A stretch of 64,000 nt of DNA, taken from Takakia lepidozioides. Its lineage: Eukaryota > Plantae > Bryophyta. This document shows positions 1-21,956 of this stretch, one piece after another; the first letter of the stretch is position 1, and every line of letters starts with the position of its first letter. The translations under genes and the position numbers were made by a program. The notes under the pieces are model-generated. The model was not told the DNA's origin and searched no databases. It worked only from the letters and a program-made list of their open reading frames with translations. The stretch lies in NCBI GenBank assembly GCA_030704615.1, contig CM060733.1:42408001-42472000 (forward strand). The letters are read 5' to 3'.

Positions 1-1292
1 CTCACGAGATAAGGTTCTCTGATTGAAGAATGAGGCACTTTCGTTCCAACCGTAAGCTTTTTTATGTTTGCTTCTCCTTGTTTAGCGACAAAAATCTTGC
101 TCACTATGGGCAAGCATGCGCTCAAGGCTAAATTAGCTTGCCCGACACGATTACCATATACCCCCAGCCGCCTTCCCCATTGTAAGCGGTGGCTAAAATG
201 GCGTCAAACGGAAGGCTCTATACGCCCGTGTTTTGGAAAGAAAGAAGGCCTCGGAAATATCCAAGGGTTGGGATTCCCCTCGGAGCCGAGCACCCCTTCG
301 ATCCAAGTTGCCCGGGCGGGCAATGACTAGACTCTCGACTTCTCTAAGTGTGGAGACACAAAAAGAGTTAAGGTATTTTATTCCAAACAAGTTTCGCTTG
401 ATTGCTCAAGCTCATCAGTGCAACACCAAGAGATGAAGTCCTAAGAGCCAAGCCTATCCTTATATACTAGAAAAACACACTCACTATGTGCAAACGATAT
501 GGGATAATTCCCAAGGCAATAATAATGCCACTAAAGCACTAATTTAGCCTCCAAGTCAAGACTGCATTAATTAGTCAATGGTCCAAATTAATTGTTGGAA
601 CCCTTTGACTTTAACATCAACACTAGGGTTATCAAAGAGGCAAAATTAATAATGCTAGGGACATTTGCACTACAAGATCATCCTATCATTCTAGATTTAA
701 CTAAGAATGAACTCAGCTTTCGCGGGTTCCTCCAACAAATCATCGTTCAAGGAAGAAATCGAAGCTCCGGGACTTGCTGAAGCAACTCGTGGAGTCTAGG
801 GTTTAGGGTGACCCCCAAGTTCAAGGCTCGAGTGTACGAAGAGTAGTCGAGCTTAAGAACAAGGGGGGCCCGTTTACCCTCAACTACGCGTTGCGTCTGT
901 TGGTCGAGTAGAGCGGATCTGAGGTCGTAGGAGATCTTGGTGAAGCAACTCCGGATGAACGCCGCTGGATAACCTCGGGCTCGAAGACATTTGTAAAACA
1001 AAAGTCGCAAATGGTTGAACCCTTGGATGGTGCTTTCTCGTATTACGTACTGTTGGAGCTCGCCGATGACGAAAGCTTTCTTTTGGTGATGTGGATGTCA
1101 TGAGGACCAAGGCAAGTATTGATACTTGTTCTGGGCTTTTTGATGATATCTGGTAGAGAGCCGTCGAGTTTGGATGAAGTCGTCTCATTTAAAGAAGGTG
1201 ATATGCAAGATGTCGGCAAACGTCGGGCTTATGGCAGTCGTGATTTTGATGCCATCGAACATGGAACCGTAGTTCCGTAACTAGGACCAAAA
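1..1292 (-). mobile_element. Penelope-like element family A, copy 1 (diverged, 5'-truncated; pLTR plus RT C-terminal remnant 678-1292)
   Basis: Colinear with 1966-3510 and 10163-11710 but with many substitutions and a 254-bp deletion at 128/129. Translation LRARGYPAAFIRSCF...KRAPLVLKLDYS matches the RT C-terminus. Confidence 0.9.
381..423 (-). ncRNA. Minimal hammerhead ribozyme (family A), stem I mutated
   Basis: Minus strand TTGCA-CTGATGA-GCTTGA GCAA TCAAGC-GAAAC TT GTT-TGGAA; one stem I mismatch relative to the other A copies. Confidence 0.8.
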
Positions 1293-1630
1293 GCTGAGCT
1301 CATCAGTGGGAAAGAAAAAGAATGAGATACAAACCCCACCCCCCGCTTATATACTACTAGGAGTGAACTGCCTCGTGTGGACAATCTTCCAGTGGATGTC
1401 TCGTGAGGAGAAAAACCATCCAACAAACGTCACGTACGGAGAGAATAGTCCAAAAAGTCTCGGTGGGAGAAAGTCATCCAGTGGATGAAAACAAGTTCTC
1501 GACAAGAGAGAACTAGATCCAAAGAATAAAAAATCATCCAAATAGTCAATTGCATATCTCTCAAATACAACTAACTCCGTGAGTTTATGACTATGCAACA
1601 ACCAATTATACTGAAGTTACAGCATGTTGT
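1293..1630 (-). mobile_element. Family C fragment joined directly to A copy 1
   Basis: Matches 6122-6455; starts inside the ribozyme (GAGCTCATCAGTGGG). Confidence 0.85.
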
Positions 1631-1712
1631 TTAAAGGATTAGGGTTTAAGGGTTTAAGGGTTTAAGGGTTTTTAGGGTTTAGGGGTTAGGGTTTAGGGTT
1701 AGGGTTTAGGGT
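1631..1712 (+). repeat. Degenerate telomeric tract (TTTAGGG/TTTAAGGG/TTAGGG variants)
   Basis: Direct reading, about 11 units. Confidence 0.95.
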
Positions 1713-1774
1713 TCACATAAAGCGTCAAAACAAGTGTAGCCGTACCTCACAAGTTTAGGGTTTAGGGTTTAGGG
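1713..1774 (+). repeat. 33-bp family C stub, CTCACAAG linker (1746-1753) and (TTTAGGG)3
   Basis: TCACATAAAGCGTCAAAACAAGTGTAGC is the start of the C cDNA, followed by CTCACAAG and telomeric repeats 1754-1774. Confidence 0.9.
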
Positions 1775-4700
1775 TGGTTAGCAAAGGCTTGCAAAGGTAA
1801 CAAAAAGTAGAAAAATACTGGAAAAAGACACAGTAAAAATTAAGGGGGGCCGGTTCGGACCCAAATACAAATGCAATGGAAACCAAGACAAATGCATACA
1901 AAGTGCGCCTATCGTGCCTAAAGGGATGCAATAAGACTATTATGTCTTATGCAAGGACTCCCGCCCTCACGAGATAAGGTTCTCTAATTGAAGAATGAGG
2001 CACTTTCGTTCCAACCGTAAGCTTTTTTATGTTTGCTTCTCCTTGTTTAGCGACAAAAATCTTGCTCACTATGGGCAAGCATGCGCTCAAGGCACTCACA
2101 AACATAGGGTCAAGTCTCAACCCCTAGTTGGAAAACTTATATGCCCCACCTTCAAAAAGAGGTTCGTACCTCTAAGGAAGAATGGGAGGGATTACCGCAT
2201 AAGGTCATCGACGAGAAGGTTAGGTCGGCAGAGGCTTGCGCATGCCCATAGTCCTCTGATCGCTCGAGATGAACTCGAGGGAGGATCAACCAAATCCCTT
2301 CTCTCCGACCATCGGGCGTACGACAGGGGGAACCGTGTAGTCGGGGCTAAATTAGCTTGCCCGACACGATTACCATATACCCCCAGCCGCCTTCCCCATT
2401 GTAAGCGGTGGCTAAGATGGCGTCAAACGGAAGGCTCTATACGCCCGTGCTTCGGAAAGAAAAAAGGCCTCGGAAGTATCCAAGGGTTGGGATTCCCTCG
2501 GAGCCGAGCACCCCTTCGATCCAAGTTGCCCGGGCGGGCAAGGACTAGACTCTCGACTTCTCTAAATGTGGAGACACAAAAAGAGTTAAGGTGTTTTATT
2601 CCAAACAAGTTTCGCTTGATTGCTCAAGCTCATCAGTGGAACACCAAGAGATGAAGTCCTAAGAGCCAAGCCTATCCTTATATACTAGAAAAACACCCTC
2701 ACTATGTGCAAACGATATGGGATAATTCCCAAGGCAATAATAATGCCACTAAAGCACTAATTTAGCCTCCAAGTCAAGACTGCATTAATTAGTCAATGGT
2801 CCAAATTAATTGTTGGAACCCTTTGACTTTAACATCAACACTAGGGCTATCAAAGAGGCAAAATTAATAATGCTAGGGACATTTGCACTACAAAAATCAT
2901 CCTATCATTCTAGATTTAACTAGGAATGAACTCAGTTTTCGCGGATTCCTCCAACAAATCATCGCTCGAGGAAGAAACCGAAGCTCCGGGACTTGCTGAA
3001 GCAACTCGTGGAGTCTAGGGTTAGGGTGGCCCCCAAGTTCAAGGCTCGAGTGTACGAAGAGTAGTCGAGCTTAAGAACAAGGGGGGCCCGTTTACCCTCA
3101 ACTGCGCGTTGCGTCTGTTGGTCGAGTAGAGCGGATTTGAGGTCGTAGGAGATCTTGGTGAAGCAACTCCGGATGAACGCCGCCGGATAACCTCGGGCTC
3201 GAAGACGTTTGTAAAACAAAAGTCGCAAATGGTTGAACCCTTGGATGGTGCTTTCTCGTATTACGTACCGTTGGAGCTCGCCGATGACGAAAGCTTTCTT
3301 TTGGTGATGTGGATGCCACGAGGACCAAGGCAAGTATTGATACTTGTTCTGGGCCTTTTGATGACATCTCGTAGAGAGCCGTCGAGTTTGGATGAAGTCG
3401 TCTCCTTTGAGGAAGGTGATATCCAAGATGTCGGCGGACGTCGGGCTTATGGCGGTCGTGATTTTGATGCCATCGAACATGGAACCGTAGTTCCGTAACC
3501 AGGACCGGAGGCTCTTTTCGGAGCCTACCCAGATGCCAAAGCCGTCGTCGATATAGCGCTTAAGATAAAGCAGCTCTTGCTCCGATGGGCACACGTACTC
3601 CATGTACATCTCCAACCGACAGAGGAACAAACAAGCGTAAACAACTGCAAAGTTGCTCCCATGGCCGTCCCGCGAATTTGGTGCCAAAAACTACCATTGA
3701 ACTCAAGGTAATGGTGTTTCAAGACTAATCCAGCGAGGGTCATGATCAGGTCTTTTTTGTGTTTGGTGAAATTACCTCCAATAGCACATTCGAGCTCATA
3801 CAAGCCGAGCTCGGTGATGATGCTGGGATATAGAGATTCCACGTCAAACGTAAAAAGAAGAGCATGCGAGGGGACCTCGAGTTGGGAAACCTCTCGAAGA
3901 AGCGTGAGAGAATCAACCAAATGAGTGGGTTCCTTGAGAAGTACCGGAAGGAGTTGGTGATGGAGCCAAATTGAAGCATGCTCGAAGATGTAGTTGTTGT
4001 AGGAACAAATGGGTCTTCCAACAAGCACGGGTTTGTGCACCTTCGGAATGAAGTACAAAGCACAAGCTCGAAAGTCCGTGGACGACCGAGGGCGTTGGCG
4101 GATGTAATTCCATTCTTTGGTGGAGATCGCAAACCTGTAGATTGGATGGCAAGCCAACACCTCCAACCTCGACCAAAGTTCTTCCCACGGTACGGAATCC
4201 ACGGGACGATAAACTTCGGTGTCTGAGAGTTGCCGCATCGCCTCTTGCATGTACCAAGACTTGTCCATAAGCACAAGACCAAGATTTTTGTCGGCCGGCT
4301 TGATGACAAGGTCCGGATCCGACCTCAATCTTTTGAGAGCAAGTCTCAAGTGTCTCGGCAGACAAGGTCGTGCATTGCGGGCGATTCGATCCAAACGGCT
4401 AGACAAAAGATCATTACCTTCTCGAATGATGGCCTCGAGCGGTTGAGATTCCACTGGCGGATTGAATGATGGATTCGGAACGCGCCAAAGAGGAACCTCG
4501 TCGTTGTCTTTGCCCGAGAAGAACGTTCGCAACCTCAAGCTTCGAGCAAAATTGTTGAATTCGGTGATGATTGAAGATCGGGAAGGGGGAAGAGGACGAG
4601 GAATGTAATTGAGACCAAGGCCCAGGAGTTGTCGCTCCGCAAAGGAGAGAACCCTCTTGCTATAGTTGTGGATAGCAGTGTTGGTGACCCTGCATTCCAC

Positions 4701-4877
4701 TTGGGAGGGAGTCTTCCTAGCAAAGAGCAACAAAGCGTAAGCCTTCGGGTCTACGAGCGGGTACCAGAAGAGACTCCTCGTGCGCCCCCGCGTCTGTGAG
4801 GAGGTACGTATGGCCGCTTCGTCTTCCTCGTCGTCGTCGTCGCACCCTTCGTCGTGGCCGGTTTTCCGTTGACCCTC
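1775..4877 (-). mobile_element. PLE family A copy 2 (pLTR plus whole RT core with 1-nt frameshifts, truncated within ORF1)
   Basis: Near-identical to 9977-13076. ORFs 3525-4733 and 2959-3687 carry KPADKNLG, FTFDVESLY, GTAMG and RYIDDG; single-base deletions near 3021 and 3657. Confidence 0.95.
2599..2641 (-). ncRNA. Minimal hammerhead ribozyme (family A)
   Basis: Minus strand TTCCA-CTGATGA-GCTTGA GCAA TCAAGC-GAAAC TT GTT-TGGAA: catalytic boxes, 6-bp stem II with GNRA loop, 5-bp stem I. Confidence 0.9.
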
Positions 4878-4933
4878 ACAAGTTTAGGGTTTAGGGTTTA
4901 GGGGTTTAGGGTTTAGGGGTTTAGGGTTTAGGG
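4875..4933 (+). repeat. CTCACAAG linker and telomeric tract (about 7 units) capping A copy 2
   Basis: Direct reading; includes two TTTAGGGG variants. Confidence 0.95.
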
Positions 4934-5568
4934 TTTACATAAAGCGTCAAAACAAGTGTAGCAGTACAACGCGGATGCACCGGGTGCAAGATAAACACGA
5001 TCCGGGCAAACGAGTTTTAGGGGGGCGAGTTATGCACCCTTGGAAAAATTTCAGATCCTGTGAATCAAACCTGAAAGGAGAGATCCTGAGAGACAGGAAA
5101 CTAGAATAGAAGTATGCGAGGTGTCCTGAAATGCAACTGCAAACCTATGCAAGAGGCAAATGTGCGTATGAGAATTATTTCACTGGATGCACAGGAGAAT
5201 AAGAACCCTATCTCTGTTTTGCAAGAGAATGGACACACTAGGAACAACTTAGATGCAGATCTCATATGCACTACTCGAAAGGGAGTTTATGGCATAGAAT
5301 AGAAGTATGCGAGGTGTCCTGAAATGCAACTGCAAACCTATGCAAGAGGCAAATGTGCGTATGAGAACTATTTCACTGGATGCACAGGAGAATAAGAACC
5401 ATATCTCTGTTTTGCAAGAGAATGGACACACTAGGAACAACTTAGATGCAGATCTCACATGCACGACTCGAAAGGGAGTTTATGGCATGCCGTATAGACA
5501 CAGAGCACATAACAATGCAATGATCTAAAGCAGGGGATACAAACGCATCTAAAACTCGACAACTTCAA
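4934..5568 (-). mobile_element. Family C fragment with internal 193-bp tandem duplication
   Basis: Matches 5598-6040; GAATAGAAGTATGCG...GGAGTTTATGGCAT is repeated at 5104 and 5297. Confidence 0.9.
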
Positions 5569-5597
5569 GTTTAGGGTTTAGGGTTTAGGGTTTAGGG
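5569..5597 (+). repeat. (TTTAGGG)4 telomeric tract
   Basis: Direct reading. Confidence 0.95.
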
Positions 5598-6096
5598 TTC
5601 ACATAAAGCATCAAAACAAGTGTAGCAGTACAACGCGGATGCACCGGGTGCAAGATAAACACGATCCGGGCAAACAAGTTTTAGGGGGGGGCCAGTTATG
5701 CACCCCTGGAAAAATTTCAGATCCTGTGAATCAAACCTGAAAGGAGAGATCCTGAGAGACAGGAAACTAGAATAGAAGTATGCGAGGTGTCCTGAAATGC
5801 AACTGCAAACCTATGCAAGAGGCAAATGTGCGTATGAGAACTATTTCACTGGATGCACAGGAGAATAAGAACCCTATCTCTGTTTTGCAAGAGAATGGAC
5901 ACACTAGGAACAACTTAGATGCAGATCTCCCATGCACTACTCGAGAGGGAGTTTATGGCATGCCGTATAGACACAGGGCACATAACAATGCAATGATCTA
6001 AAGCAGGGGATACAAACGCATCTAAAACTCGACAACTTCAAAGGGTGAGACTACGAGGCAAGATCATGCAAAGTAGTGAAGCCAAATCTTTATAGA

Positions 6097-6138
6097 CCCC
6101 AGACTAGTTTCGCTCAGCGCGTGAGCTCATCAGTGGGA
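6097..6138 (-). ncRNA. Minimal hammerhead ribozyme (family C)
   Basis: Minus strand TCCCA-CTGATGA-GCTCA CGCGC TGAGC-GAAAC TA GTC-TGGGG; GUC cleavage triplet, palindromic ACTAGT stem III. Confidence 0.92.
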
Positions 6139-7253
6139 AAGAAAAGGAATGAGATACAAACCCCACCCCCCGCTTATATACTACTAGGAGTGAACTGCCT
6201 CGTGTGGACAATCTTCCAGTGGAGGTCTCGTGAGGAGAAAAACCATCCAACAGATGTCTCGTACGGAGAGAATAGTCCAAAAAGTCTCGGTGGGAGAAAG
6301 TCATCCAGTGGATGAAAACAAGTTCTCGACAAGAGAGAACTAGATCCAAAGAATAAAAATCATCCAAATAGTCAATTGCATATCTCTCAAATACAACTAA
6401 CTCCGTGAGTTTATGACTATGCAACAACCAATTATGCTGAAGTTAGAGCATGTTGTGCAAAGTCGTAAGGGCTGAAACCACTTCGAAAGGAACGCACAAC
6501 TCGTAAGAGCTTTTGCACACGCAGACCATCGCGCAACCATCGTCTTGCTAAAGCCTGCAGCTGTGTTGTCCTGAACGTGTCCAACCACGATCCCCACCTT
6601 CCGACCTCCAAGACGAAACACGGCTCGGTCTTCGTATTGTTGCCTCATCACATGAATGAGCAGCTTGGTCAAAAGAATGAAGATCAACATCTGCCTCCAT
6701 TACGTGAAGGCGATTAAAGATGTGTTGCAGCTAACACTGTAAGAAAGTTTAGGGTTCACATAAAGCGTCAAAACAAGTGTAGCAGTACAACGCGGATGCA
6801 CCGGGTGCAAGATAAACACGATCCGGGCAAACAAGTTTTAGGGGGGGGGCAGTTATGCACCCCTGGAAAAATTTCAGATCCTGTGAATCAAACCTGAAAG
6901 GAGAGATCCTGAGAGACAGGAAACTAGAATAGAAGTATGCGAGGTGTCCTGAAATGCAACTGCAAACCTATGCAAGAGGCAAATGTGCGTATGAGAACTA
7001 TTTCACTGGATGCACAAGAGAATAAGAACCCTATCTCTGTTTTGCAAGAGAATGGACACACTAGGAACAACTTAGATGCAGATCTCCCATGCACTACTCG
7101 AGAGGGAGTTTATGGCATGCCGTATAGACACAGAGCACATAACAATGCAATGATCTAAAGCAGGGGATACAAACGCATCTAAAACTCGACAACTTCAAAG
7201 GGTGAGACTACGAGGCAAGATCATGCAAAGTAGTGAAGCCAAATCTTTATAGA

Positions 7254-7295
7254 CCCCAGACTAGTTTCGCTCAGCGCGTGAGCTCATCAGTGGGA
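7254..7295 (-). ncRNA. Minimal hammerhead ribozyme (family C)
   Basis: Same sequence as 6097-6138. Confidence 0.92.
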
Positions 7296-8409
7296 AAGAA
7301 AAGGAATGAGATACAAACCCCACCCCCCGCTTATATACTACTAGGAGTGAACTGCCTCGTGTGGACAATCTTCCAGTGGAGGTCTCGTGCGGAGAAAAAC
7401 CATCCAACAGATGTCTCGTACGGAGAGAATAGTCCAAAAAGTCTCGGTGGGAGAAAGTCATCCAGTGGATGAAAACAAGTTCTCGACAAGAGAGAACTAG
7501 ATCCAAAGAATAAAAATCATCCAAATAGTCAATTGCATATCTCTCAAATACAACTAACTCCGTGAGTTTATGACTATGCAACAACCAATTATGCTGAAGT
7601 TAGAGCATGTTGTGCAAAGTCGTAAGGGCTGAAACCACTTCGAAAGGAACGCACAACTCGTAAGAGCTTTTGCACACGCAGACCATCGCGCAACCATCGT
7701 CTTGCTAAAGCCTGCAGCTGTGTTGTCCTGAACGTGTCCAACCACGATCCCCACCTTCCGACCTCCAAGACGAAACACGGCTCGGTCTTCGTATTGTTGC
7801 TTCATCACATGAATGAGCAGCTTGGTCAAAAGAATGAAGATCAACATCTGCCTCCATTACGTGAAGGCGATTAAAGATGTGTTGCAGCTAACACTGTAAG
7901 AAAGTTTAGGGTTCACATAAAGCATCAAAACAAGTGTAGCAGTACAACGCGGATGCACTGGGTGCAAGATAAACACGATCCGGGCAAACAAGTTTTAGGG
8001 GGGGGCAGTTATGCACCCCTGGAAAAATTTCAGATCCTGTGAATCAAACCTGAAAGGAGAGATCCTGAGAGACAGGAAACTAGAATAGAAGTATGCGAGG
8101 TGTCCTGAAATGCAACTGCAAACCTATGCAAGAGGCAAATGTGCGTATGAGAACTATTTCACTGGATGCACAGGAGAATAAGAACCCTATCTCTGTTTTG
8201 CAAGAGAATGGACACACTAGGAACAACTTAGATGCAGATCTCCCATGCACTACTCGAGAGGGAGTTTATGGCATGCCGTATAGACACAGAGCACATAACA
8301 ATGCAATGATCTAAAGCAGGGGATACAAACGCATCTAAAACTCGACAACTTCAAAGGGTGAGACTACGAGGCAAGATCATGCAAAGTAGTGAAGCCAAAT
8401 CTTTATAGA

Positions 8410-8451
8410 CCCCAGACTAGTTTCGCTCAGCGCGTGAGCTCATCAGTGGGA
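8410..8451 (-). ncRNA. Minimal hammerhead ribozyme (family C)
   Basis: Same sequence as 6097-6138. Confidence 0.92.
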
Positions 8452-8511
8452 AAGAAAAGGAATGAGATACAAACCCCACCCCCCGCTTATATACTACTAG
8501 GAGTGAACTGC

Positions 8512-8538
8512 CACAAGTTTAGGGTTTAGGGCTTAGGG
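8512..8538 (+). repeat. CACAAG linker and 3 telomeric repeats
   Basis: CACAAG TTTAGGG TTTAGGG CTTAGGG. Confidence 0.92.
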
Positions 8539-9952
8539 TTCACATAAAGCATCAAAACAAGTGTAGCAGTACAACGCGGATGCACCGGGTGCAAGATAAA
8601 CACGATCCGGGCAAACAAGTTTTAGGGGGGCCACTTATGCACCCCTGGAAAAATTTCAGATCCTGTGAATCAAACCTGAAAAGAGAGATCCTGAGAGACA
8701 GGAAACTAGAATAGAAGTATGCGAGGTGTCCTGAAATGCAACTGCAAACCTATGCAAGAGGCAAATGTGCGTATGAGAACTATTTCACTGGATGCACAGG
8801 AGAATAAGAACCCTATCTCTGTTTTGCAAGAGAATGGACACACTAGGAACAACTTAGATGCAGATCTCACATGCACTACTCGAAAGGGAGTTTATGGCAT
8901 AGAATAGAAGTATGCGAGGTGTCCTGAAATGCAACTGCAAACCTATGCAAGAGGCAAATGTGCGTATGAGAACTATTTTCACTGGATGCACAGGAGAATA
9001 AGAACCCTATCTCTGTTTTGCAAGAGAATGGACACACTGGGAACAACTTAGATGCAGATCTCACATGCACTACTCGAAAGGGAGTTTATGGCATGCCGTA
9101 TAGACACAGGGCACATAACAATGCAATGATCTAAAGCAGGGGATACAAACGCATCTAAAACTCGACAACTTCAAAGGGTGAGACCACGAGGCAAGATCAT
9201 GCAAAGTAGTGAAGCCAAATCTTTATAGACCCCAGACTAGTTTCGCTCAGCGCGTGAGCTCATCAGTGGGAAAGAAAAGGAATGAGATACAAACCCCACC
9301 CCCCGCTTATATACTACTAGGAGTGAACTGCCTCGTGTGGACAATCTTCCAGTGGATGTCTCGTGAGGAGAAAAACCATCCAACAGATGTCTCGTACGGA
9401 GAGAATAGTCCAAAAGTCTCGGTGGGAGAAAGTCATCCAGTGGATGAAAACAAGTTCTCGACAAGAGAGAACTAGATCCAAAGAATAAAAATCATCCAAA
9501 TAGTCAATTGCATATCTCTCAAATACAACTAACTCCGTGAGTTTATGACTATGCAACAACCAATTATGCTGAAGTTAGAGCATGTTGTGCAAAGTCGTAA
9601 GGGCTGAAACCACTTCGAAAGGAACGCACAACTCGTAAGAGCTTTTGCACACGCAGACCATCGCGCAACCATCGTCTTGCTAAAGCCTGCAGCTGTGTTG
9701 TCCTGAACGTGTCCAACCACGATCCCCACCTTCCGACCTCCAAGACGAAACACGGCTCGGTCTTCGTATTGTTGCCTCATCACATGAATGAGCAGCTTGG
9801 TCAAAAGAATGAAGATCAACATCTGCCTCCATTACGTGAAGGCGATTAAAGATGTGTTGCAGCTAACACTGTAAGAAAGTTTAGGGTTCACATAAAGCGT
9901 CAAAACAAGTGTAGCAGTACAACGCGGATGCACCGGGTGCAAGATAAACACG
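8539..9952 (-). mobile_element. Family C, one full unit (with the 193-bp duplication) plus a 66-bp start of the next
   Basis: Same unit as 5598-6754; seamless internal junction at 9880-9886. Confidence 0.9.
9230..9271 (-). ncRNA. Minimal hammerhead ribozyme (family C)
   Basis: Same sequence as 6097-6138. Confidence 0.92.
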
Positions 9953-9976
9953 GGTTTAGGGTTTAGGGTTTAGGGT
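9953..9976 (+). repeat. Telomeric tract (about 3 units)
   Basis: Direct reading. Confidence 0.95.
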
Positions 9977-10795
9977 TTAGCAAAGGCTTGCAAAGGTAAA
10001 AAAATAGAAAAATACTGGAAAAAGACACAGTAAAAATTAAGGGGGGCCGGTTCGGACCCAAATACAAATGCAATGGAAACCAAGACAAATGCATACAAAG
10101 TGCGCCTATCGTGCCTAAAGGGATGCAATAAGACTATTATGTCTTATGCAAGGACTCCCGCCCTCACGAGATAAGGTTCTCTAATTGAAGAATGAGGCAC
10201 TTTCGTTCCAACCGTAAGCTTTTTTATGTTTGCTTCTCCTTGTTTAGCGACAAAAATCTTGCTCACTATGGGCAAGCATGCGCTCAAGGCACTCACAAAC
10301 ATAGGGTCAAGTCTCAACCCCTAGTTGGAAAACTTATATGCCCCACCTTCAAAAAGAGGTTCGTACCTCTAAGGAAGAATGGGAGGGATTACCGCATAAG
10401 GTCATCGACGAGAAGGTTAGGTCGGCAGAGGCTTGCGCATGCCCATAGTCCTCTGATCGCTCGAGATGAACTCGAGGGAGGATCAACCAAATCCTTCTCT
10501 CCGACCATCGGGCGTACGACAGGGGGAACCGTGTAGTCGGGGCTAAATTAGCTTGCCCGACACGATTACCATATACCCCCAGCCGCCTTCCCCATTGTAA
10601 GCGGTGGCTAAGATGGCGTCAAACGGAAGGCTCTATACGCCCGTGCTTCGGAAAGAAAAAAGGCCTCGGAAGTATCCAAGGGTTGGGATTCCCCTCGGAG
10701 CCGAGCACCCCTTCGATCCAAGTTGCCCGGGCGGGCAAGGACTAGACTCTCGACTTCTCTAAATGTGGAGACACAAAAAGAGTTAAGGTGTTTTA

Positions 10796-10838
10796 TTCCA
10801 AACAAGTTTCGCTTGATTGCTCAAGCTCATCAGTGGAA
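10796..10838 (-). ncRNA. Minimal hammerhead ribozyme (family A)
   Basis: Same sequence as 2599-2641. Confidence 0.9.
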
Positions 10839-10874
10839 CACCAAGAGATGAAGTCCTAAGAGCCAAGCCTATCC

Positions 10875-10882
10875 TTATATAC
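10875..10882 (-). promoter_or_regulatory. Putative TATA box of the family A pLTR
   Basis: GTATATAA about 48 nt upstream of the ribozyme core; same motif and spacing in B and C. Confidence 0.6.
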
Positions 10883-11093
10883 TAGAAAAACACCCTCACT
10901 ATGTGCAAACGATATGGGATAATTCCCAAGGCAATAATAATGCCACTAAAGCACTAATTTAGCCTCCAAGTCAAGACTGCATTAATTAGTCAATGGTCCA
11001 AATTAATTGTTGGAACCCTTTGACTTTAACATCAACACTAGGGCTATCAAAGAGGCAAAATTAATAATGCTAGGGACATTTGCACTACAAAAA

Positions 11094-13205
11094 TCATCCT
11101 ATCATTCTAGATTTAACTAGGAATGAACTCAGCTTTCGCGGATTCCTCCAACAAATCATCGCTCGAGGAAGAAACCGAAGCTCCGGGACTTGCTGAAGCA
11201 ACTCGTGGAGTCTAGGGTTTAGGGTGGCCCCCAAGTTCAAGGCTCGAGTGTACGAAGAGTAGTCGAGCTTAAGAACAAGGGGGGCCCGTTTACCCTCAAC
11301 TGCGCGTTGCGTCTGTTGGTCGAGTAGAGCGGATCTGAGGTCGTAGGAGATCTTGGTGAAGCAACTCCGGATGAACGCCGCCGGATAACCTCGGGCTCGA
11401 AGACGTTTGTAAAACAAAAGTCGCAAATGGTTGAACCCTTGGATGGTGCTTTCTCGTATTACGTACCGTTGGAGCTCGCCGATGACGAAAGCTTTCTTTT
11501 GGTGATGTGGATGCCACGAGGACCAAGGCAAGTATTGATACTTGTTCTGGGCCTTTTGATGACATCTCGTAGAGAGCCGTCGAGTTTGGATGAAGTCGTC
11601 TCCTTTGAGGAAGGTGATATCCAAGATGTCGGCGGACGTCGGGCTTATGGCGGTCGTGATTTTGATGCCATCGAACATGGAACCGTAGTTCCGTAACCAG
11701 GACCGGAGGCTCTTTTCGGAGCCTACCCAGATGCCAAAGCCGTCGTCGATATAGCGCTTAAGATAAAGCAGCTCTTGCTCCGATGGGCACACGTACTCCA
11801 TGTACATCTCCAACCGACAGAGGAACAAACAAGCGTAAACAACTGCAAAGTTGCTCCCCATGGCCGTCCCGCGAATTTGGTGCCAAAAACTACCATTGAA
11901 CTCAAGGTAATGGTGTTTCAAGACTAATCCAGCGAGGGTCATGATCAGGTCTTTTTTGTGTTTGGTGAAATTACCTCCAATAGCACATTCGAGCTCATAC
12001 AAGCCGAGCTCGGTGATGATGCTGGGATATAGAGATTCCACGTCAAACGTAAAAAGAAGAGCATGCGAGGGGACCTCGAGTTGGGAAACCTCTCGAAGAA
12101 GCGTGAGAGAATCAACCAAATGAGTGGGTTCCTTGAGAAGTACCGGAAGGAGTTGGTGATGGAGCCAAATTGAAGCATGCTCGAAGATGTAGTTGTTGTA
12201 GGAACAAATGGGTCTTCCAACAAGCACGGGTTTGTGCACCTTCGGAATGAAGTACAAAGCACAAGCTCGAAAGTCCGTGGACGACCGAGGGCGTTGGCGG
12301 ATGTAATTCCATTCTTTGGTGGAGATCGCAAACCTGTAGATTGGATGGCAAGCCAACACCTCCAACCTCGACCAAAGTTCTTCCCACGGTACGGAATCCA
12401 CGGGACGATAAACTTCGGTGTCTGAGAGTTGCCGCATCGCCTCTTGCATGTACCAAGACTTGTCCATAAGCACAAGACCAAGATTTTTGTCGGCCGGCTT
12501 GATGACAAGGTCCGGATCCGACCTCAATCTTTTGAGAGCAAGTCTCAAGTGTCTCGGCAGACAAGGTCGTGCATTGCGGGCGATTCGATCCAAACGGCTA
12601 GACAAAAGATCATTACCTTCTCGAATGATGGCCTCGAGCGGTTGAGATTCCACTGGCGGATTGAATGATGGATTCGGAACGCGCCAAAGAGGAACCTCGT
12701 CGTTGTCTTTGCCGGAGAAGAACGTTCGCAACCTCAAGCTTCGAGCAAAATTGTTGAATTCGGTGATGATTGAAGATCGGGAAGGGGGAAGAGGACGAGG
12801 AATGTAATTGAGACCAAGGCCCAGGAGTTGTCGCTCCGCAAAGGAGAGAACCCTCTTGCTATAGTTGTGGATAGCAGTGTTGGTGACCCTGCATTCCACT
12901 TGGGAGGGAGTCTTCCTAGCAAAGAGCAACAAAGCGTAAGCCTTCGGGTCTACGAGCGGGTACCAGAAGAGACTCCTCGTGCGCCCCCGTGTCTGTGAGG
13001 AGGTACGTATGGCCGCTTCATCTTCGTCATCGTGGTCGTCGCACCCTTTGCCGTGGCCGGTTTTCCGTTGACCCTCGCTGAAGGTTTTCGGCCTCCCGTA
13101 CCAGAGCCGGTTGTGCGGTTCGGGCCTGACCTCTTGTTGAAAGAGGTAGGTGACGCAGCAGAACGGGTGGAGACCCGGATACCTTTCTGCTGCTTGCCGT
13201 TTCCC
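11094..13205 (-). CDS. Penelope-like reverse transcriptase, endonuclease-lacking (frame extends upstream of the 12932 TTG to a -1 frameshift site)
   Basis: LLGLGLNYIP, KPADKNLG, PKVHKP...GRPICS, FTFDVESLYPSI, GTAMGSNFA, KRYIDDGF, YLPWSSWHP. The frame is open and conserved with family B up to 13205, with no in-frame ATG between 13205 and the 12932 TTG. Confidence 0.93.
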   Translation of the reverse strand, partial: GKRQAAERYPGLHPFCCVTYLFQQEVRPEPHNRLWYGRPKTFSEGQRKTGHGKGCDDHDDEDEAAIRTSSQTRGRTRSLFWYPLVDPKAYALLLFARKTPSQVECRVTNTAIHNYSKRVLSFAERQLLGLGLNYIPRPLPPSRSSIITEFNNFARSLRLRTFFSGKDNDEVPLWRVPNPSFNPPVESQPLEAIIREGNDLLSSRLDRIARNARPCLPRHLRLALKRLRSDPDLVIKPADKNLGLVLMDKSWYMQEAMRQLSDTEVYRPVDSVPWEELWSRLEVLACHPIYRFAISTKEWNYIRQRPRSSTDFRACALYFIPKVHKPVLVGRPICSYNNYIFEHASIWLHHQLLPVLLKEPTHLVDSLTLLREVSQLEVPSHALLFTFDVESLYPSIITELGLYELECAIGGNFTKHKKDLIMTLAGLVLKHHYLEFNGSFWHQIRGTAMGSNFAVVYACLFLCRLEMYMEYVCPSEQELLYLKRYIDDGFGIWVGSEKSLRSWLRNYGSMFDGIKITTAISPTSADILDITFLKGDDFIQTRRLSTRCHQKAQNKYQYLPWSSWHPHHQKKAFVIGELQRYVIRESTIQGFNHLRLLFYKRLRARGYPAAFIRSCFTKISYDLRSALLDQQTQRAVEGKRAPLVLKLDYSSYTRALNLGATLNPRLHELLQQVPELRFLPRAMICWRNPRKLSSFLVKSRMIG

Positions 13206-14002
13206 GACTTTCCGCCAGGATTCGCCTTAGGCTTACTAGCCGGTTTGGTCCCAAGCTTCTGGGCCTTAGGTTTCACCTGGATGGAATTCACCACCTTTTT
13301 CACCTCCTTGAGTACTTCCTTGACCACCTCGCGTTTCACGAGGGTAGCAATGGACGGTTCCACAGGGAGGGTCTCCGCTTCTTCCATAGCACCTTCCCGA
13401 GCAACGTTGCGAGCTGCGATAGCCGCGGCCTTGCTGACGTCGGAAAGTTGTTTGTGAATGAGAAATGCATCTACATGAGTAACGAAGAGATTGCTAAGAT
13501 GAAGATGCCACGACTCGATGGAAGACTTAGACTTGTCACCTATCAAATTTAAGGATCGTAAAGACGAAATCAAATCCGAGAGGCGAGTCTCAAAGACCGG
13601 TTTCGATTGCTCGAGCTTGTGGGTCAAGCTAGCAAGTCGAGATTCTTGGGCTTTGATGAGTGCTTCAAAGCACTTGATCCGATATGCGGTTGTGCATTCG
13701 GCCAGGCTCGCATCAAGGACGGATTGGGCCTCGGGATCTCCTATTTGAAGTTTAGGAGGACTCATTCTAAGGGAGTTGGGTATGGTGCCTTCTTCGAATT
13801 GCACTCGCAATTTTTGAAGGTACTTGGAAGTCTTTTCATGCTCATGCCTAAGACTTTTGAATTCCTTGACCGATGTATGCACAAATGCAAGCAAAGGGGG
13901 AGGAATGGAGATATCCATGCTAGAAGAAGTAGACGCGGATGCATGAGAAGGGCCGACGCCTAAGCTAGGACATGGACGTTTGTTACCTGCTAGTTCCGCC
14001 AT
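12950..14002 (-). CDS. PLE family A ORF1 (350 aa; helical/coiled-coil N-half, basic low-complexity C-tail; probable nucleic-acid-binding protein)
   Basis: Intact ATG ORF. Shares G.IP..LR/CR...PKL.I, RN.AR..AM..A..LP.EP.IA.LV..EV and GNG with family B ORF1. Confidence 0.85.
   Translation of the reverse strand: MAELAGNKRPCPSLGVGPSHASASTSSSMDISIPPPLLAFVHTSVKEFKSLRHEHEKTSKYLQKLRVQFEEGTIPNSLRMSPPKLQIGDPEAQSVLDASLAECTTAYRIKCFEALIKAQESRLASLTHKLEQSKPVFETRLSDLISSLRSLNLIGDKSKSSIESWHLHLSNLFVTHVDAFLIHKQLSDVSKAAAIAARNVAREGAMEEAETLPVEPSIATLVKREVVKEVLKEVKKVVNSIQVKPKAQKLGTKPASKPKANPGGKSGNGKQQKGIRVSTRSAASPTSFNKRSGPNRTTGSGTGGRKPSARVNGKPATAKGATTTMTKMKRPYVPPHRHGGARGVSSGTRS
13155..13205 (-). promoter_or_regulatory. 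-1 programmed ribosomal frameshift signal (G_GGA_AAC, 5-nt spacer, hairpin)
   Basis: Heptamer 13205-13199 in the ORF1 phase; stem GCAGCAGAA/TTCTGCTGC with inner CGGGT/ACCCG; the -1 frame is the RT frame. Confidence 0.8.
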
Positions 14003-14012
14003 GGAAAAAGGA

Positions 14013-14027
14013 GTTTAGGGTTTAGGG
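14013..14027 (-). promoter_or_regulatory. Element-encoded (CCCTAAA)2C just upstream of the ORF1 ATG; putative telomere-annealing/priming site
   Basis: A copies 2 and 3 begin at or within a few bases of this site after telomeric tracts (1775, 9977). Confidence 0.75.
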
Positions 14028-14317
14028 TGGTCAACAAAGGCTTGCAAAGATAACAAAACGTAGAAAAAATACTGGAAAAAGACATAGTAAATTTTAAGGG
14101 GGGCCGGTTAGGACCCAAATACAAATGCAATGGAAACCAAGACAAATGCATACAAAGTGCGCCTACCGTGCCTAAAGGGATGCTATAAGACTATTATGTC
14201 TTATGCAAGGACTCCCGCCCTCACGAGATAAGGTTCTCTAATTGAAGAATGAGGCACTTTCGCTCCAACCGTAAGCTTTTTTATGTTTGCTTCTCCTTGT
14301 TTAGCGACAAAAATCTT

Positions 14318-14346
14318 CTCACAAGTTTAGGGTTTAGGGTTTAGGG
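14318..14346 (+). repeat. CTCACAAG linker and (TTTAGGG)3
   Basis: Direct reading. Confidence 0.95.
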
Positions 14347-14817
14347 TCTACAAAAGAGTGGAAACAAATACATGTAGCAGTGCAACAGAGTTCGAACCGC
14401 GAATGCACCGGGTGCATTAGTAGCAAAGTGCAAACAAGTTTTTAGGGGGGCCAGTTATGGACACCTTAGAAAGCTTGTAGAAATATCTAGCCTGTGAATC
14501 AAAACTAAAAGAATCGATCCTGAGACACAAAACTAGAATAGAACAGAGTGGGAGTGATGTTGCAACGTTCTAAAGTGCAAATGCAAGTATATGCAAGAGG
14601 CAAGTGTGTGTGATGAAACTAATTCACTGTAAGGACAGGAGAATAGTAACCTATCTCTAAGAAAGAGAATAGACACACTAAAGAGCAGTCTTAGAAGGAG
14701 ATCTAACATGTAACACTCGAAAAGGAGTTTAAAACATGCACTACAATAGACACAAAGCAAATGAATGCAATGAACTATGCAGAAGATCAAATCTAAAACT
14801 CAACAACAACAACAACG
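14347..14817 (-). mobile_element. Family B pLTR segment, inverted relative to 17104-17573
   Basis: Reverse complement of 17104-17573; begins at the B CCCTAAAC site. Confidence 0.92.
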
Positions 14818-14820
14818 AGA

Positions 14821-16711
14821 GAAGAGGGCTCGCAAGCTCTTCTGGTGGCCGTTGAGGGATGTAGAAGGCTATAAGCTTTATCTTTTTTCCTGCAAGAGAG
14901 TCTCTCAGGCAGAGAACAGGTTAACCAACATGGCCATCCACAACATGGCCAATCGTCCACTCTCTTGTTTTGAAAAGAAGCTTTTAGGCCTAGGTTTGAG
15001 TTTTATTCCTCATCCTACTCCTCCTTCTCCCTCTTCTATTCTTGATGCTTATGACTCTTTGGCTCGATCTTTACGTCTTCGATATCACTTCAGGGATGCT
15101 AGAGATAGACCCATTCCTCCTTTCAGAGTTCCTCAACCTTCTTGGGATCAGTGTGTGCGACTTCCTGCTCTGGAAAGCATTATCATCGAGGGTCGCAACA
15201 TTGTAGAGACTCGGTTAAGGGAGGTGGCTCGCTCTGCCTACAGGTCTTCTATTCGAGGTCACCTCAAGACTGCGATACGCTGTCTGAGCAGAGATGAGTC
15301 CATCGTCATCAAGCCAGCAGACAAAAATCTTGGGTTGGTGATCATGCGGAAGGACTGGTATGTGGATGAGGCTCACCGCCAACTCCACGATGGACAAGTT
15401 TACGAATCCGTGGCAGAGATCCCATTTGACAATCTCACATATGGTTTGGATGCATTGCTCGCTTCCGCTCTCTTGTTTGGATTGATTGACAGGCAGACAA
15501 GGGACTTTTTGGCGCTCAAGCCCCAAGGGGGCTACCGACCCTGCATGTTTTATCTCGTGCCCAAAATGCACAAGCCCGTGGTGGTTGGGAGGCCGATTTG
15601 TTCATACAACGGATATGTTTTTGAGCACGCATCCAAGTGGTTGCATCACCATCTGTTTCCCATTCTGCTCGAGGAAGATAACCATTTGGTAGATTCTATA
15701 TCTTTGTTGAAAGATCTGTCGGATAGGCAACTTCCTGGCGACGTGCTTTTGTTCACCTTTGATGTGGAGTCATTGTATCCTAGCATTTCTACTGGGGACG
15801 GGCTTCGACGATTGAAGGAGATGATTGCCGGCAAGCTCAAGTCACCTCGGTTTGAAAGATTCGTCCTGAGTCTTTCTCGCATGGTGTTGGAGAATAACTA
15901 TCTTCAATTTGGCTCCAGCTATTGGCATCAGATCCGAGGCACGGCAATGGGTAGCAACTTTGCTGTTGTTTATGCTTGTCTCTTTCTTTGCAGCTTAGAA
16001 AGAGAGTTGGCTGGTGCTGGAGGAGGCATGTGGCCTCTATACTACAAGAGATACATCGATGATGGATTTGGAATTTGGGCAGGATCTCGGGCAAGTTTGG
16101 AGGCTTGGCTCGATGGATACAACTCTCTTAGTCCCACAATTCGGATTCAAAGGGTAATCTCTGAGTCTACGGTTGACATTCTTGATATTAAGTTCTTCAA
16201 GGGAGCTGATTTTGTCAACCATGGGATTTTATCTTCGAGATGTCATCAAAAGGCACTCAACAGATACCAGTATTTGCCATGGACCTCGTGTCATCCACGA
16301 CACCAAAAACGAGCATTCATCATTGGCGAATTACGACGTTACACTTTGAGGGAGAGCACACGCGCAGGTTTTTCTGAGATCAGGCAACTGTTCTATGAGC
16401 GACTGCGTGCTCGAGGCTATCCAAAGTCTTTTATCTTGGAGTGTTTTGTGCTTTGTGACTATGCACAACGTGCTACACTGTTGACTTCAGAGTCCACTCG
16501 TAAGTTGACGGGCAAGCGGGCCCCCTTGGTTTTGAAACTTGAGCATTCGCGTTATACTCAAGCTCTAAGCTTTGAGGGAGTCCTAAACCCTAAACTTCAT
16601 GAGGGCTTTTTGAAAGTTCCGCAGTTAGCGTCTTTTGACAGACCTATGGTATGTTGGAAGAGGGCACGGAACTTGCGTTCCTATCTAGTTCGTGCTATGT
16701 TACAAACCTAG
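14821..16711 (+). CDS. PLE family B reverse transcriptase (uninterrupted; native N-terminus lost at the inversion junction)
   Basis: KPADKNLG, PKMHKP...GRPICS, FTFDVESLYPSI, GTAMGSNFA, KRYIDDGF; no endonuclease domain. Confidence 0.93.
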
Positions 16712-17588
16712 AGGCTAGTTGTATTTGAGACATGCAGTTAGCTTCTAGTTTGGATGATTATCCATTTTGGAGAGAACATTAGGATGTTTTTCATCTAGAT
16801 TTTCATGCGTTGGATATTTCTCCCCTGCCGAGAAAACTTTGGATGTTTTTCATCTAAGTTTTCATGTGTTGGACGATCTCTCCAGCCAAGACAATTTGGA
16901 TGTTTTCCATCCATTAGGTATTTTCTCTCCCCCCGAGACAAGTTCACTTTCCGCAGTATATAAGCGGGGTGAGGGTGCACATTGTATCTCTTTTCCTTCT
17001 CTTTCCCACTGATGAGCTCACGCGCTGAGCGAAACTAGTTTGGGGATTATAGAGATTCGCTTTGCTGCATCTTGTGTTCTTGTCTCTTTGTCTCATTGGC
17101 GGCGTTGTTGTTGTTGTTGAGTTTTAGATTTGATCTTCTGCATAGTTCATTGCATTCATTTGCTTTGTGTCTATTGTAGTGCATGTTTTTAAACTCCTTT
17201 TCGAGTGTTACATGTTAGATCTCCTTCTAAGACTGCTCTTTAGTGTGTCTATTCTCTTTCTTAGAGATAGGTTACTATTCTCCTGTCCTTACAGTGAATT
17301 AGTTTCATCACACACACTTGCCTCTTGCATATACTTGCATTTGCACTTTAGAACGTTGCAACATCACTCCCACTCTGTTCTATTCTAGTTTTGTGTCTCA
17401 GGATCGATTCTTTTAGTTTTGATTCACAGGCTAGATATTTCTACAAGCTTTCTAAGGTGTCCATAACTGGCCCCCCTAAAACTTGTTTGCACTTTGCTAC
17501 TAATGCACCCGGTGCATTCGCGGTTCGAACTCTGTTGCACTGCTACATGTATTTGTTTCCACTCTTTTGTAGACCCTAAACATTTGTT
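16712..17588 (+). repeat. Family B pLTR / inter-ORF region (TATA 16956-16963, ribozyme, CCCTAAAC 17574-17581)
   Basis: Homologous to family C; partly repeated at 14347-14817 (inverted) and 44076-44397. Confidence 0.85.
17003..17046 (+). ncRNA. Minimal hammerhead ribozyme (family B)
   Basis: TTCCCA-CTGATGA-GCTCA CGCGC TGAGC-GAAAC TA GTT-TGGGGA. Confidence 0.9.
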
Positions 17589-19528
17589 ATGATGTTAGCT
17601 GCAACTTCTGAACCTTCTTCTTCCAAGCGTCCTAGGATAGAGATGAATAGTGATGGTGCTCCTGCAGAAGATCTACCGTCTTATTCGCCTCCAAGGGATT
17701 TATCTCCTACTCCAAGGCCGCAAGTTGGGATTTTTTTCAACCAGAATGATCATTCTCCAGACTTTGTGGATGCTATTCGCAAGTTGTTGGACAACTCTCT
17801 GGCGCAGTACAAGAAGGATTTCAAGAGACTTCAACGTCTCAAGGCAACTTCCGACAAACTCAGATCTCAAAAAGCTGCCGGTGAAATTCCTCATGCTTGT
17901 AGAGTTGCTTGTCCGAAGTTGGTCATCTCTTCTGCCTCTGTCCAGACGTCTTTGGATGCTACTGTCCTAGCAGCCACTGTTGCTTACCATTCAGCTTTGC
18001 AAACAGCTTTTATTCAAGCTCATTCCGATCTGGTACAAGAAGCTGAAGCTGTTTTGAGCAAATCCTCTGATGTTTTCATTGCTCGACTCAGGGAGATCAA
18101 CTTGCATGTGTGTATCTTCTTGCACTGACCAGATTCAGGATTCTTCTTGGCTCTTTGATGAGCTTGACTTTGTGTGCACTCAAGCCACTACAGCTTGGTA
18201 TGCCGGAATTTCTTGCTTTCGCGCCAACCACAACCTCGGTACTGCAGTGAGGGATAAGGCGTTACATGAAAGGAACCAAGCTAGAGATCAGGCCATGGCA
18301 GATGCTGATGTTCTTCTACTGAGCCTACCATTGCCGAGCTAGTAAGGAAAGAGGTGCAGAAACAACTTTCCCACTCACGAAAGAAAACTTCTCTCTCTCC
18401 TACTCGCCTAAGCAACATCAACGAGCGCGTTCTTCCTCTCCTAACCACAAGAGGCGACAACAGCGTGGCCGCTCACCTGCTCGACGAGTCTCCAAGACTC
18501 AACCTACCAGCCGAGGCACTTCAGCAAATGCCAAGGTACCTTCCTCCAAGGCAAACTCTTCAAAGCAGCAGGGAAATGGCCAACAGCGGAATGGGACTGC
18601 TCGCACCCATTTCGCTGCATCGCGTTCATCTTCTCCGAGCAAATCCGCCCTACGTTCTCAGACCCGTTCTGGTTCTGGACAACAAAAGTCGGGGCAAAAC
18701 CAACAATAGAAGCTCAAGAAGAAGGTCACATGGGCAGATCCAAGCCGAAGAGAGCTCGCAAGCTCTTCTGGTGGCCGTTGAGGGATGTAGAAGGCTATAA
18801 GCTTTATCTTTTTTCTTGCAAGAGAGTCTCTCAGGCAGAGAACAGGTTAACCAACATGGCCATCCACAACATGGCCAATCGTCCACTCTCTTGTTTTGAA
18901 AAAAGCTTTTAGGCCTAGGTTTGAGTTTTATTCCTCATCCTACTCCTCCCTTCTCCCTCTTCTATTCTTGATGCTTATGACTCTTTGGCTCGATCTTTAC
19001 GTCTTCGATATCACTTCAGGGATGCTAGAGATAGACCCATTCCTCCTTTCAGAGTTCCTCAACCTTCTTGGGATCAGTGTGTGCGACTTCCTGCTCTGGA
19101 AAGCATTATCATCGAGGGTCGCAAATTGTAGAGACTCGGTTAAGGGAGGTGGCTCGCTCTGCCTACAGGTCTTCTATTCGAGGTCACCTCAAGACTGCGA
19201 TACGCTGTCTGAGCAGAGATGAGTCCATCGTCATCAAGCCAGCAGACAAAAATCTTGGGTTGGTGATCATGCGGAAGGACTGGTATGTGGATGAGGCTCA
19301 CCGCCAACTCCACGATGGACAAGTTTACGAATCCGTGGCAGAGATCCCATTTGACAATCTCACATATGGTTTGGATGCATTGCTCGCTTCCGCTCTCTTG
19401 TTTGGATTGATTGACAGGCAGACAAGGGACTTTTTGGCGCTCAAGCCCCAAGGGGGCTACCGACCCTGCATGTTTTATCTCGTGCCCAAAATGCACAAGC
19501 CCGTGGTGGTTGGGAGGCCGATTTGTTC
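17589..19528 (+). pseudogene. Second tandem family B unit: frameshifted ORF1 and RT N-terminal part, cut at 19528
   Basis: ORF1 pieces match the intact 44398 ORF; 18747-19528 repeats 14821-15603 with indels. Confidence 0.9.
18571..18617 (+). promoter_or_regulatory. -1 frameshift signal of family B (G_GGA_AAU, 6-nt spacer, 12-bp hairpin)
   Basis: GGGAAAT at 18571-18577; CAGCGGAATGGG/CCCATTTCGCTG; the -1 frame is open into RT (RARKLFWWPL). Same heptamer in ORF1 phase at 45384-45390. Confidence 0.8.
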
Positions 19529-21470: not shown

Positions 21471-21956
21471 CTATTTCATGAGCATGAGCGGTATGAGTGG
21501 CATGAGCGGAGTAGTAAGACAATTGGTTTTCATGAGCAGAAGTACAAATTTTGGAAATAAAAAACATTAAAAAAACATTAAAAAACATTGTTTTAATGGA
21601 ATGTGTCAGAAAAAAACAAAAAAGCCAATATAATATTCATTGTTTGAAGTAGAAATTGTAGTTTTGAGAGCAGTGCTCATGATATTTCGTCTTCCGCTCA
21701 TGCGAATTCCGAGCGACATCTGAAAAAATGGCGCCGAATTTCGCGGTAATAGGTTCCGCAAGCGGAGAAATCGGCGACGTATTGCGCGGTAATAGGTGTC
21801 TCCGGCGAAAAATGGTGCCGAATTTTGCGGTTATAGGTCCCAACTTGATTGAAGTGTAAGCCCAAAATTTGGAAATGTGGCGCTGAATTTCGGTACATGG
21901 TGTCGGGCATTGCACAAATGTTGGGCAGTTCTGGGCCATGTAACTAGAAATTCGGC

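What the first reader, a model, noticed from the sequence alone, without database searches (positions are those of the whole stretch)
1746..14325. Recurrent CTCACAAG linker before added telomeric tracts: candidate footprint of the telomerase RNA template flank
Seen: at five truncation points in unrelated sequence contexts the first TTTAGGG is preceded by the same linker or a suffix of it: CTCACAAG (1746, 4875, 14318), CACAAG (8512), and TCAAG/CAAG (5565, weakest because it is almost all element sequence). The intact elements continue differently (gtac-AACGC, ccctc-GCTG, tctt-GCTCACTAT, tgcc-TCGT, ttcaa-AGGG) and often share 1-5 nt of microhomology with the linker. The flank of the CCCTAAAC site in A (-TCCTTT), B (-ATTTGT) and C (-TTTCTT) does not match. 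Inference: a fourth RNA reading 5'-CCCUAAAC-UUGUGAG-3' templated these bases. The simplest candidate is telomerase RNA, with non-telomeric ends annealing 3' of the template during de novo addition. That would predict part of the host telomerase RNA from healing scars. Alternative: another PLE-related RNA; family B RT contains the similar CCCTAAACTTCATGAG at 16588.
Basis: partly seen in the sequence, partly recalled or inferred. Interest (0 to 1): 0.9.

Follow-up and report, generated by a model that had tools for sequence, protein, structure and literature searches.

The report
RNA-copied scar at healed telomeres
In a plant's array of telomere-targeting retrotransposons, newly added telomere repeats repeatedly begin with the same short foreign sequence, most likely copied from the telomerase RNA just beyond its template, so the scars may reveal part of that RNA.

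Summary
Seven truncated ends in this array of endonuclease-less Penelope-like elements (PLEs) carry added telomeric tracts. Chance is about 1e-5. The linker is independent of the upstream and downstream element, is at most 8 nt in exact copies, and is always followed by 3 or more repeats. Homologous Cryptomeria arrays heal without such a linker. The best explanation (about 0.6) is that non-telomeric ends paired just 3' of the telomerase RNA template and the flank was copied first; mouse TERC-ITS loci show this (6-7 nt in the table rows read, PMC2246262). It is unproven: the host is unidentified (TE hits point to a non-seed plant), and its telomerase RNA could not be retrieved. The main rival is a fourth PLE RNA, which is strengthened by a telomere-complementary site conserved inside these RT genes. 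Verdict: real, probably a plant instance of a known telomerase behaviour, with one decisive genome search outstanding.

The parts
1746..1753 (+). Full 8-nt linker after a 34-nt stub of family C; telomeric tract 1754-1774, then family A
4875..4882 (+). Full linker at a truncation in ORF1 of family A (CTC shared with the element); tract 4883-4933 with variant repeats, then family C
5566..5569 (+). Weak case: CAA is element sequence, only G is added; tract 5570-5597, then family C
8512..8517 (+). 6-nt linker suffix at a truncation in family C; tract 8518-8538, then family C
14318..14325 (+). Full linker at a truncation in the pLTR of family A; tract 14326-14346, then family B
9953..9975 (+). De novo junction without the linker (element end plus GG, then 3 repeats); CAC lies in the linker's register
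1630..1711 (+). De novo junction without the linker; degenerate telomeric tract
11094..12932 (-). Family A PLE reverse transcriptase, 612 aa, no GIY-YIG domain
12950..14002 (-). Family A ORF1, 350 aa; its own telomere-complementary priming site lies at 14013-14028
1775..4877 (-). Truncated second copy of family A, 99.4% identical to 9976-13076
4934..9952 (-). Tandem and truncated non-autonomous family C units (about 1.15 kb), each with a hammerhead motif; the RT remnant lacks the LNP site
14347..14817 (-). Inverted, truncated family B pLTR, joined head to head with the sense-strand B tandem at about 14820
14777..16711 (+). Family B PLE reverse transcriptase ORF (the first codons span the inversion junction; homology starts near 14930), no GIY-YIG domain
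16582..16595 (+). RT-internal telomere-complementary site encoding L-N-P-K; its 3' flank resembles but does not equal the linker
17003..17048 (+). Minimal hammerhead ribozyme motif in the family B pLTR
17574..17581 (+). Family B 3' telomere-complementary priming site, flank ATTTGT

Best explanation
The array grew at a chromosome end by cycles. A PLE cDNA was truncated or the end broke (shown: truncated copies). The non-telomeric 3' end was then extended from one constant RNA that reads CCCUAAAC-UUGUGAG, starting 1-8 nt 3' of the repeat template and usually helped by a few paired bases (inferred from the shared linker). Several repeats were then added reiteratively (shown: 3-7 repeats with slippage variants), and the next PLE RNA primed on the new G-rich overhang through its own CCCUAAAC site (established PLE mechanism). 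The constant RNA is most likely the host telomerase RNA, whose template would end in ...CUAAAC and be followed by UUGUGAG, copied by TERT (inferred, not shown).
For: The same foreign bases occur at four unrelated breakpoints, P about 1e-5. The linker is independent of the upstream family (C, A, C, A) and of the downstream family (A, C, C, B), and is never followed by other unique sequence, only by 3 or more repeats, which indicates a template boundary plus reiteration. Three junctions reach the same 8 nt. In-register microhomology is enriched (sum 9 over 5 junctions, P about 0.001; 0.01 without 5566). All five intact elements carry a 4-5 nt match to the linker beside the break, against 23% for random 12-nt windows. 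No element flank in the window matches. Precedent: in mouse, 8 of 14 TERC-ITS loci have template-adjacent bases copied before the repeats, 6-7 nt in the rows read (PMC2246262); there is also one Xenopus locus (PMC8537989). Cryptomeria arrays of homologous PLEs heal in register with the repeat itself and show no shared foreign linker, so the linker is host-specific and not a general PLE product.
Against: The host TR was not found; the 15-mer occurs in the window only at junctions. Known angiosperm TR flanks differ (Arabidopsis and Nicotiana primers). In Nicotiana a 6-bp hairpin starts 1 nt after the template, which would have to melt for 8 nt to be copied. Three junctions are slightly out of register with their nearest microhomology (1746, 8512, 14318). 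Sequenced wheat healing sites showed only 2-4 nt repeat homology (PMC12094224). The family B internal flank resembles the linker more than most random sequences (P about 0.03-0.09 over five sites).
Confidence: 0.62

Rival explanations
1. A fourth PLE RNA is the template, for example the missing autonomous partner of family C or a B-like derivative. Its RT-internal telomere-complementary site, or a site placed in a hammerhead loop near the RNA end, reads CCCUAAAC-UUGUGAG. A PLE RT primes stalled ends there and stops after the site, and telomerase then adds the repeats.
For: The RT motif L-N-P is encoded by the telomere C-strand codons CTA AAC in all 8 genes with DNA (window A and B, Selaginella, two Cryptomeria families, three others), although CTA is only 5-18% of Leu codons in the seven genes counted. 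In Cryptomeria, cDNAs end at this site and are capped by long tracts. Read in that frame the linker gives L-N-P-K-L-V, keeping the conserved Leu. In L141 the priming site lies inside hammerhead stem II, about 12 nt from the cleavage site. Family C has lost its LNP site, so its parent's flank is unknown.
Against: Val replaces a His found at that position in most homologues. A PLE RT normally reads through the site into element sequence, yet no junction continues into a fourth family. Nothing explains why priming would be confined to 8 nt. In window families A, B and C the hammerhead is hundreds of nt from either site.
Confidence: 0.22
2. DNA-level repair: broken array ends invade or join (microhomology-mediated BIR or end joining) an abundant donor whose telomere junction already reads CTCACAAG, such as a short subtelomeric repeat unit or an older scar.
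For: Breakpoints are enriched for linker-like bases. Telomeric transposon arrays are known to be repaired by BIR (PMC7367193). Short unit-plus-tract repeats that end in the same bases exist in an unrelated metagenome contig, L007.
Against: Strand invasion should start at variable and often longer distances from the tract, but no junction carries more than 8 nt (13 at most, at 1746) of foreign sequence. No donor repeat is in the window. L007 was selected by the query from a very large collection and shares nothing else with the window.
Confidence: 0.12
3. Chance coincidence or an assembly artefact.
For: Only seven junctions were available. The scaffold has a gap (30687-31186) and single-base indels between near-identical copies.
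Against: P is 2.5e-6 to 3.9e-5. The upstream contexts are unrelated, so the junctions are not duplicates. The inversion at 14820 is not a palindromic fold-back.
Confidence: 0.04

Closest known systems
Mouse TERC-ITS loci (Nergadze et al. 2007, PMC2246262) and the Xenopus type C locus (Sola et al. 2021, PMC8537989)
   Same: Bases complementary to the RNA immediately 3' of the telomerase template precede the first added repeat; similar length (6-7 nt in the rows read, against up to 7 beyond the telomeric G here).
   Different: There the TR is known and, in mouse, a second inverted TERC fragment is also inserted at interstitial breaks. Here the TR is only inferred, there is no second fragment, the host is a plant, the sites are truncations in a telomeric retrotransposon array, and four or five of seven junctions in 14 kb carry it.
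Canonical de novo telomere addition (wheat, PMC12094224; Magnaporthe MoTeR arrays, PMC7367193; Cryptomeria loci L125-L134)
   Same: Truncated ends are capped by telomeric repeats with a few bases of microhomology.
   Different: There the microhomology is to the repeat itself and no foreign bases are added.
Endonuclease-deficient telomeric PLEs (Athena/Coprina type; described in PMC8557442)
   Same: RT without GIY-YIG, upstream ORF1, reverse-complement telomeric repeats, hammerhead motifs, oriented tandem and inverted truncated copies.
   Different: A constant foreign linker at capped truncations was not found in the papers searched. The nucleotide-conserved RT-internal telomere site was not found described either; the original 2007 and 2017 papers were not readable here.

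Membership tests
Plant telomerase RNA (source of the linker) | Template of at least one repeat plus one base of the C strand | tested here: met
   The inferred RNA contains CCCUAAAC, the minimum template used in PMC8287931; this is implied by the junctions and does not discriminate between sources
Plant telomerase RNA (source of the linker) | Single-copy non-coding locus with USE/TATA type-3 promoter and terminator | not testable with these tools
   Host genome not searchable; no such locus in the window. The 1-mismatch site at 49891 lacks TR features
Plant telomerase RNA (source of the linker) | Pseudoknot 3' of the template, boundary element, covariance-model match | not testable with these tools
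   Only 15 nt are inferred; no Rfam hit in the window; TR sequence tables not held or illegible
Plant telomerase RNA (source of the linker) | Behaves as a bounded, reiterated template | tested here: met
   Every linker is followed by 3-7 repeats and then by an unrelated element, never by further unique donor sequence
TERC-ITS-like template-flank copying | Added bases equal the complement of the known TR sequence 3' of the template | not testable with these tools
   Host TR unknown
TERC-ITS-like template-flank copying | Additional inverted fragment of the distal TR domain (mouse type A loci) | tested here: not met
   No insertion longer than 8-13 nt at any junction
Endonuclease-deficient telomeric PLE (the array elements) | PLE-type RT | tested here: met
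   KPADKN, GRPI, FDVESLYPSI, GTAMGS and YIDD motifs; 44-53% identity to Selaginella and Cryptomeria homologues carrying PF28514 and PF26215. No tree was built
Endonuclease-deficient telomeric PLE (the array elements) | No GIY-YIG endonuclease | tested here: met
   The ORFs end shortly after the RT C-terminal region; no Pfam hit
Endonuclease-deficient telomeric PLE (the array elements) | Short reverse-complement telomeric repeats and hammerhead motifs in the pLTR | tested here: met
   Sites; hammerhead cores with stems I and II in all three families by pattern search; Rfam models did not detect them
Endonuclease-deficient telomeric PLE (the array elements) | Located at a chromosome terminus | tested here: inconclusive
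   Oriented array with tracts, but polarity inverts at 14820 and ordinary LTR-rich DNA follows. A Cryptomeria homologue lies 13-35 kb from the start of an 863-Mb record

The most novel reading that the evidence does not exclude
A PLE ribonucleoprotein itself acts as a telomerase: it heals non-telomeric ends by copying, and reiterating on, the telomere-complementary site conserved inside its own RT gene or hammerhead loop, leaving the 3' flank of that site as the linker. That would be a living example of a retroelement-encoded proto-telomerase.
Probability: 0.05. Interest if true: 0.92.

Novelty: new variant of a known kind. Interest (0 to 1): 0.56.

Why it matters
If the telomerase RNA reading is right, this plant's telomerase routinely initiates in vivo outside its template. 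Among the papers searched, that had been seen only at a few vertebrate interstitial sites. Healing scars would then give a 15-nt search probe for a telomerase RNA, about 16,000 times more specific than the 8-nt minimum template used in current TR hunts, and they would map how far the template can slide in the enzyme. The claim is testable with one genome search. If a PLE RNA is the source instead, telomeric retroelements take part directly in end healing.

Tried and rejected
Finding the host TR: Rfam gave no hit. The Song 2019 paper was not held. Supplements of the Fajkus papers were absent or had an illegible TR table. The 15-mer scan of metagenomes gave 120 unrelated hits, judged chance; L004 is a repeat-like fragment with no TR features; L007 has the same junction look but no other link. 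Longer patterns gave 0 hits in viral contigs and 2 bacterial hits, at chance level. Host identification: no window protein is on record; the best RT relatives are 50-70% identical and unnamed; Gypsy integrase hits are mostly Riccia sorocarpa, with one Adiantum, at 43-60%, so the host stays an unidentified plant, probably non-seed. The third homologue search returned nothing because the threshold was too strict. The site at 49891 was rejected as a TR gene (unremarkable folding, z 0.48; no G-rich 5' end). Family B as the direct template was rejected: three identical linkers cannot be copying errors of its flank. A hammerhead-generated RNA end next to the site was rejected for families A, B and C. 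A fold-back artefact at 14820 was rejected. No solved structure matched.

Full report
Naming. The labels A and C are swapped in my script output.

Setting. Bases 1-19.5 kb are an array of endonuclease-less Penelope-like elements separated by short plant-type telomeric tracts. Both RTs have PLE motifs and no GIY-YIG domain. Their named relatives are in Selaginella, Cryptomeria, Ginkgo, Picea and Closterium. All three families carry a minimal hammerhead motif and a short telomere-complementary site, the features given for EN-minus PLEs in PMC8557442. The rest of the window is LTR-retrotransposon-rich DNA. The host is not identified: no window protein is on record, and Gypsy integrase hits are mostly from the liverwort Riccia at 43-60% identity. 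That suggests a non-seed plant and no more.

Observation. Comparing each tract's upstream sequence with intact copies gives seven de novo junctions. At 1746, 4875 and 14318 the first repeat is preceded by CTCACAAG, at 8512 by CACAAG and at 5566 by CAAG. The bases that the element cannot explain are 8, 5, 8 (or 3), 5 and 1 nt respectively. Two junctions lack the linker: about 1630 (degenerate tract) and 9953 (GG added; curiously CAC lies in register). The chance that four of seven share the same foreign bases is 2.5e-6, or 3.9e-5 counting only the ten least disputable bases. The upstream contexts are unrelated, so these are separate events.

What the pattern says. The linker follows truncations in C, A, C and A, and precedes tracts that lead into A, C, C and B. 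It is never followed by other unique sequence, only by 3-7 repeats, some with slippage variants. The donor is therefore independent of the neighbours, is copied for at most about 8 nt before the repeat, stops at a boundary and is reiterated. Breakpoints are enriched for linker-like bases: exact in-register overlap sums to 9 nt over five junctions (P about 0.001; 0.01 without 5566), and all five intact elements have a 4-5 nt match next to the break, against 23% for random 12-nt windows. Three of these matches are slightly out of register with the final junction, which I cannot explain; end trimming, slippage or assembly indels are possible.

Control. Six loci from Cryptomeria arrays of homologous PLEs contain many capped truncations. 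Where an intact copy was available, the overlap was with the repeat itself (for example GGTTT, GGTT, T, or the RT-internal site), and no shared foreign linker appears. The linker is thus host-specific and not a generic PLE product.

Best explanation. A non-telomeric end pairs just 3' of the telomerase RNA template, TERT copies the flank and then the template, and adds repeats; the next PLE primes on the new overhang. The steps shown are truncation, the shared foreign bases, the short tracts and the alternating elements. The identity of the RNA and of the enzyme is inferred. The precedent is close: in 8 of 14 mouse TERC-ITS loci the repeats are preceded by bases complementary to the sequence 3' of the template, 6-7 nt in the table rows I read (PMC2246262), and one Xenopus locus is similar (PMC8537989). 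A weak consistency point: if the four element bases before the 1746 linker were paired, the RNA would continue with GUAC seven bases after the template, and the Arabidopsis and Nicotiana TRs have GUUAAC and GUAAC at a similar distance (primer sequences). Against: those TR flanks otherwise differ, and in Nicotiana the flank is a hairpin arm. I put this at 0.62.

Main rival. The RT motif L-N-P is written with the telomere C-strand codons CTA AAC in all eight genes for which I have DNA, although CTA is a rare Leu codon in them. In Cryptomeria cDNAs stop at this site and receive long tracts. A fourth family with L-N-P-K-L-V at this site would contain the 15-mer. Family C has lost this segment, so its parent is an open candidate, and family B's flank resembles the linker at P about 0.03-0.09. 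In L141 a priming site even sits in hammerhead stem II close to the cleavage site. But His is the usual residue where the linker gives Val, PLE copying should run on into element sequence, and nothing restricts priming to 8 nt. I put this at 0.22, DNA-level repair from a common donor junction at 0.12, and artefact at 0.04.

What could not be done. The decisive test, locating the 15-mer in the host genome, was out of reach. Public-collection scans gave only chance-level hits, and TR sequence tables were unavailable. The source therefore cannot be filed as a telomerase RNA; it behaves like one.

Novelty and score. Template-flank copying by telomerase is known from vertebrate genomes. I found no report for plants or for PLE arrays in ten literature searches, but key subscription papers were not readable. 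This is a new variant of a known kind, with a sharp, cheap prediction.

Noticed in passing
window 16582-16595 and 11213-11224; L121, L124, L125, L126, L127, L141: The RT C-terminal L-N-P motif is always encoded by telomere C-strand codons (CTA AAC), far beyond codon-usage expectation. In Cryptomeria this internal site is where cDNAs are capped by telomeric tracts and is also used for priming. It looks like a selected second telomere-pairing site inside the coding sequence.
   Followed up: partly
window 14347-19528: Array polarity inverts at about 14820: a truncated B pLTR copy meets a sense-strand B tandem head to head. This resembles twin priming or an end-to-internal fusion, so the array may now be interstitial.
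   Followed up: partly
window 17009, 10833, 2636, 6133, 7290, 8446, 9266, 63889: Minimal Penelope-type hammerhead motifs in all three families, missed by the Rfam scan.
   Followed up: yes
L141 4710, 8517, 12018, 15826: In a Picea-like PLE family the telomere-complementary priming site lies within hammerhead stem II and its loop.
   Followed up: no
window 1288-1295: Chimeric junction: family A RT sequence joins family C pLTR sequence at the hammerhead core, with no telomeric tract.
   Followed up: no
window 44076-45421 and 61763-64000: Dispersed fragments of families B and A far from the array, without tracts; the A fragment is an inverted pair. The B fragment holds an uninterrupted ORF1 (44398-45441).
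   Followed up: no
window 49891-49905: A single repeat preceded by a one-mismatch version of the linker, in apparent intron sequence; no TR features found; probably chance.
   Followed up: yes
L007 1200-1382: A metagenome contig of unknown origin has short units ending in the same bases before telomeric tracts. It was selected by the query and shares nothing else with the window.
   Followed up: partly
window 49640-50935: Short exon-like pieces; 50846-50935 translates to a peptide that from memory resembles the C-terminal part of DNA primase small subunit; no Pfam hit.
   Followed up: partly
window about 19528-23330 and 52920-56600: Near-identical duplicated block of LTR-element DNA that starts exactly where the B RT copy is cut at 19528 (first 473 bp 99.6% identical; full extent judged by eye).
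   Followed up: no
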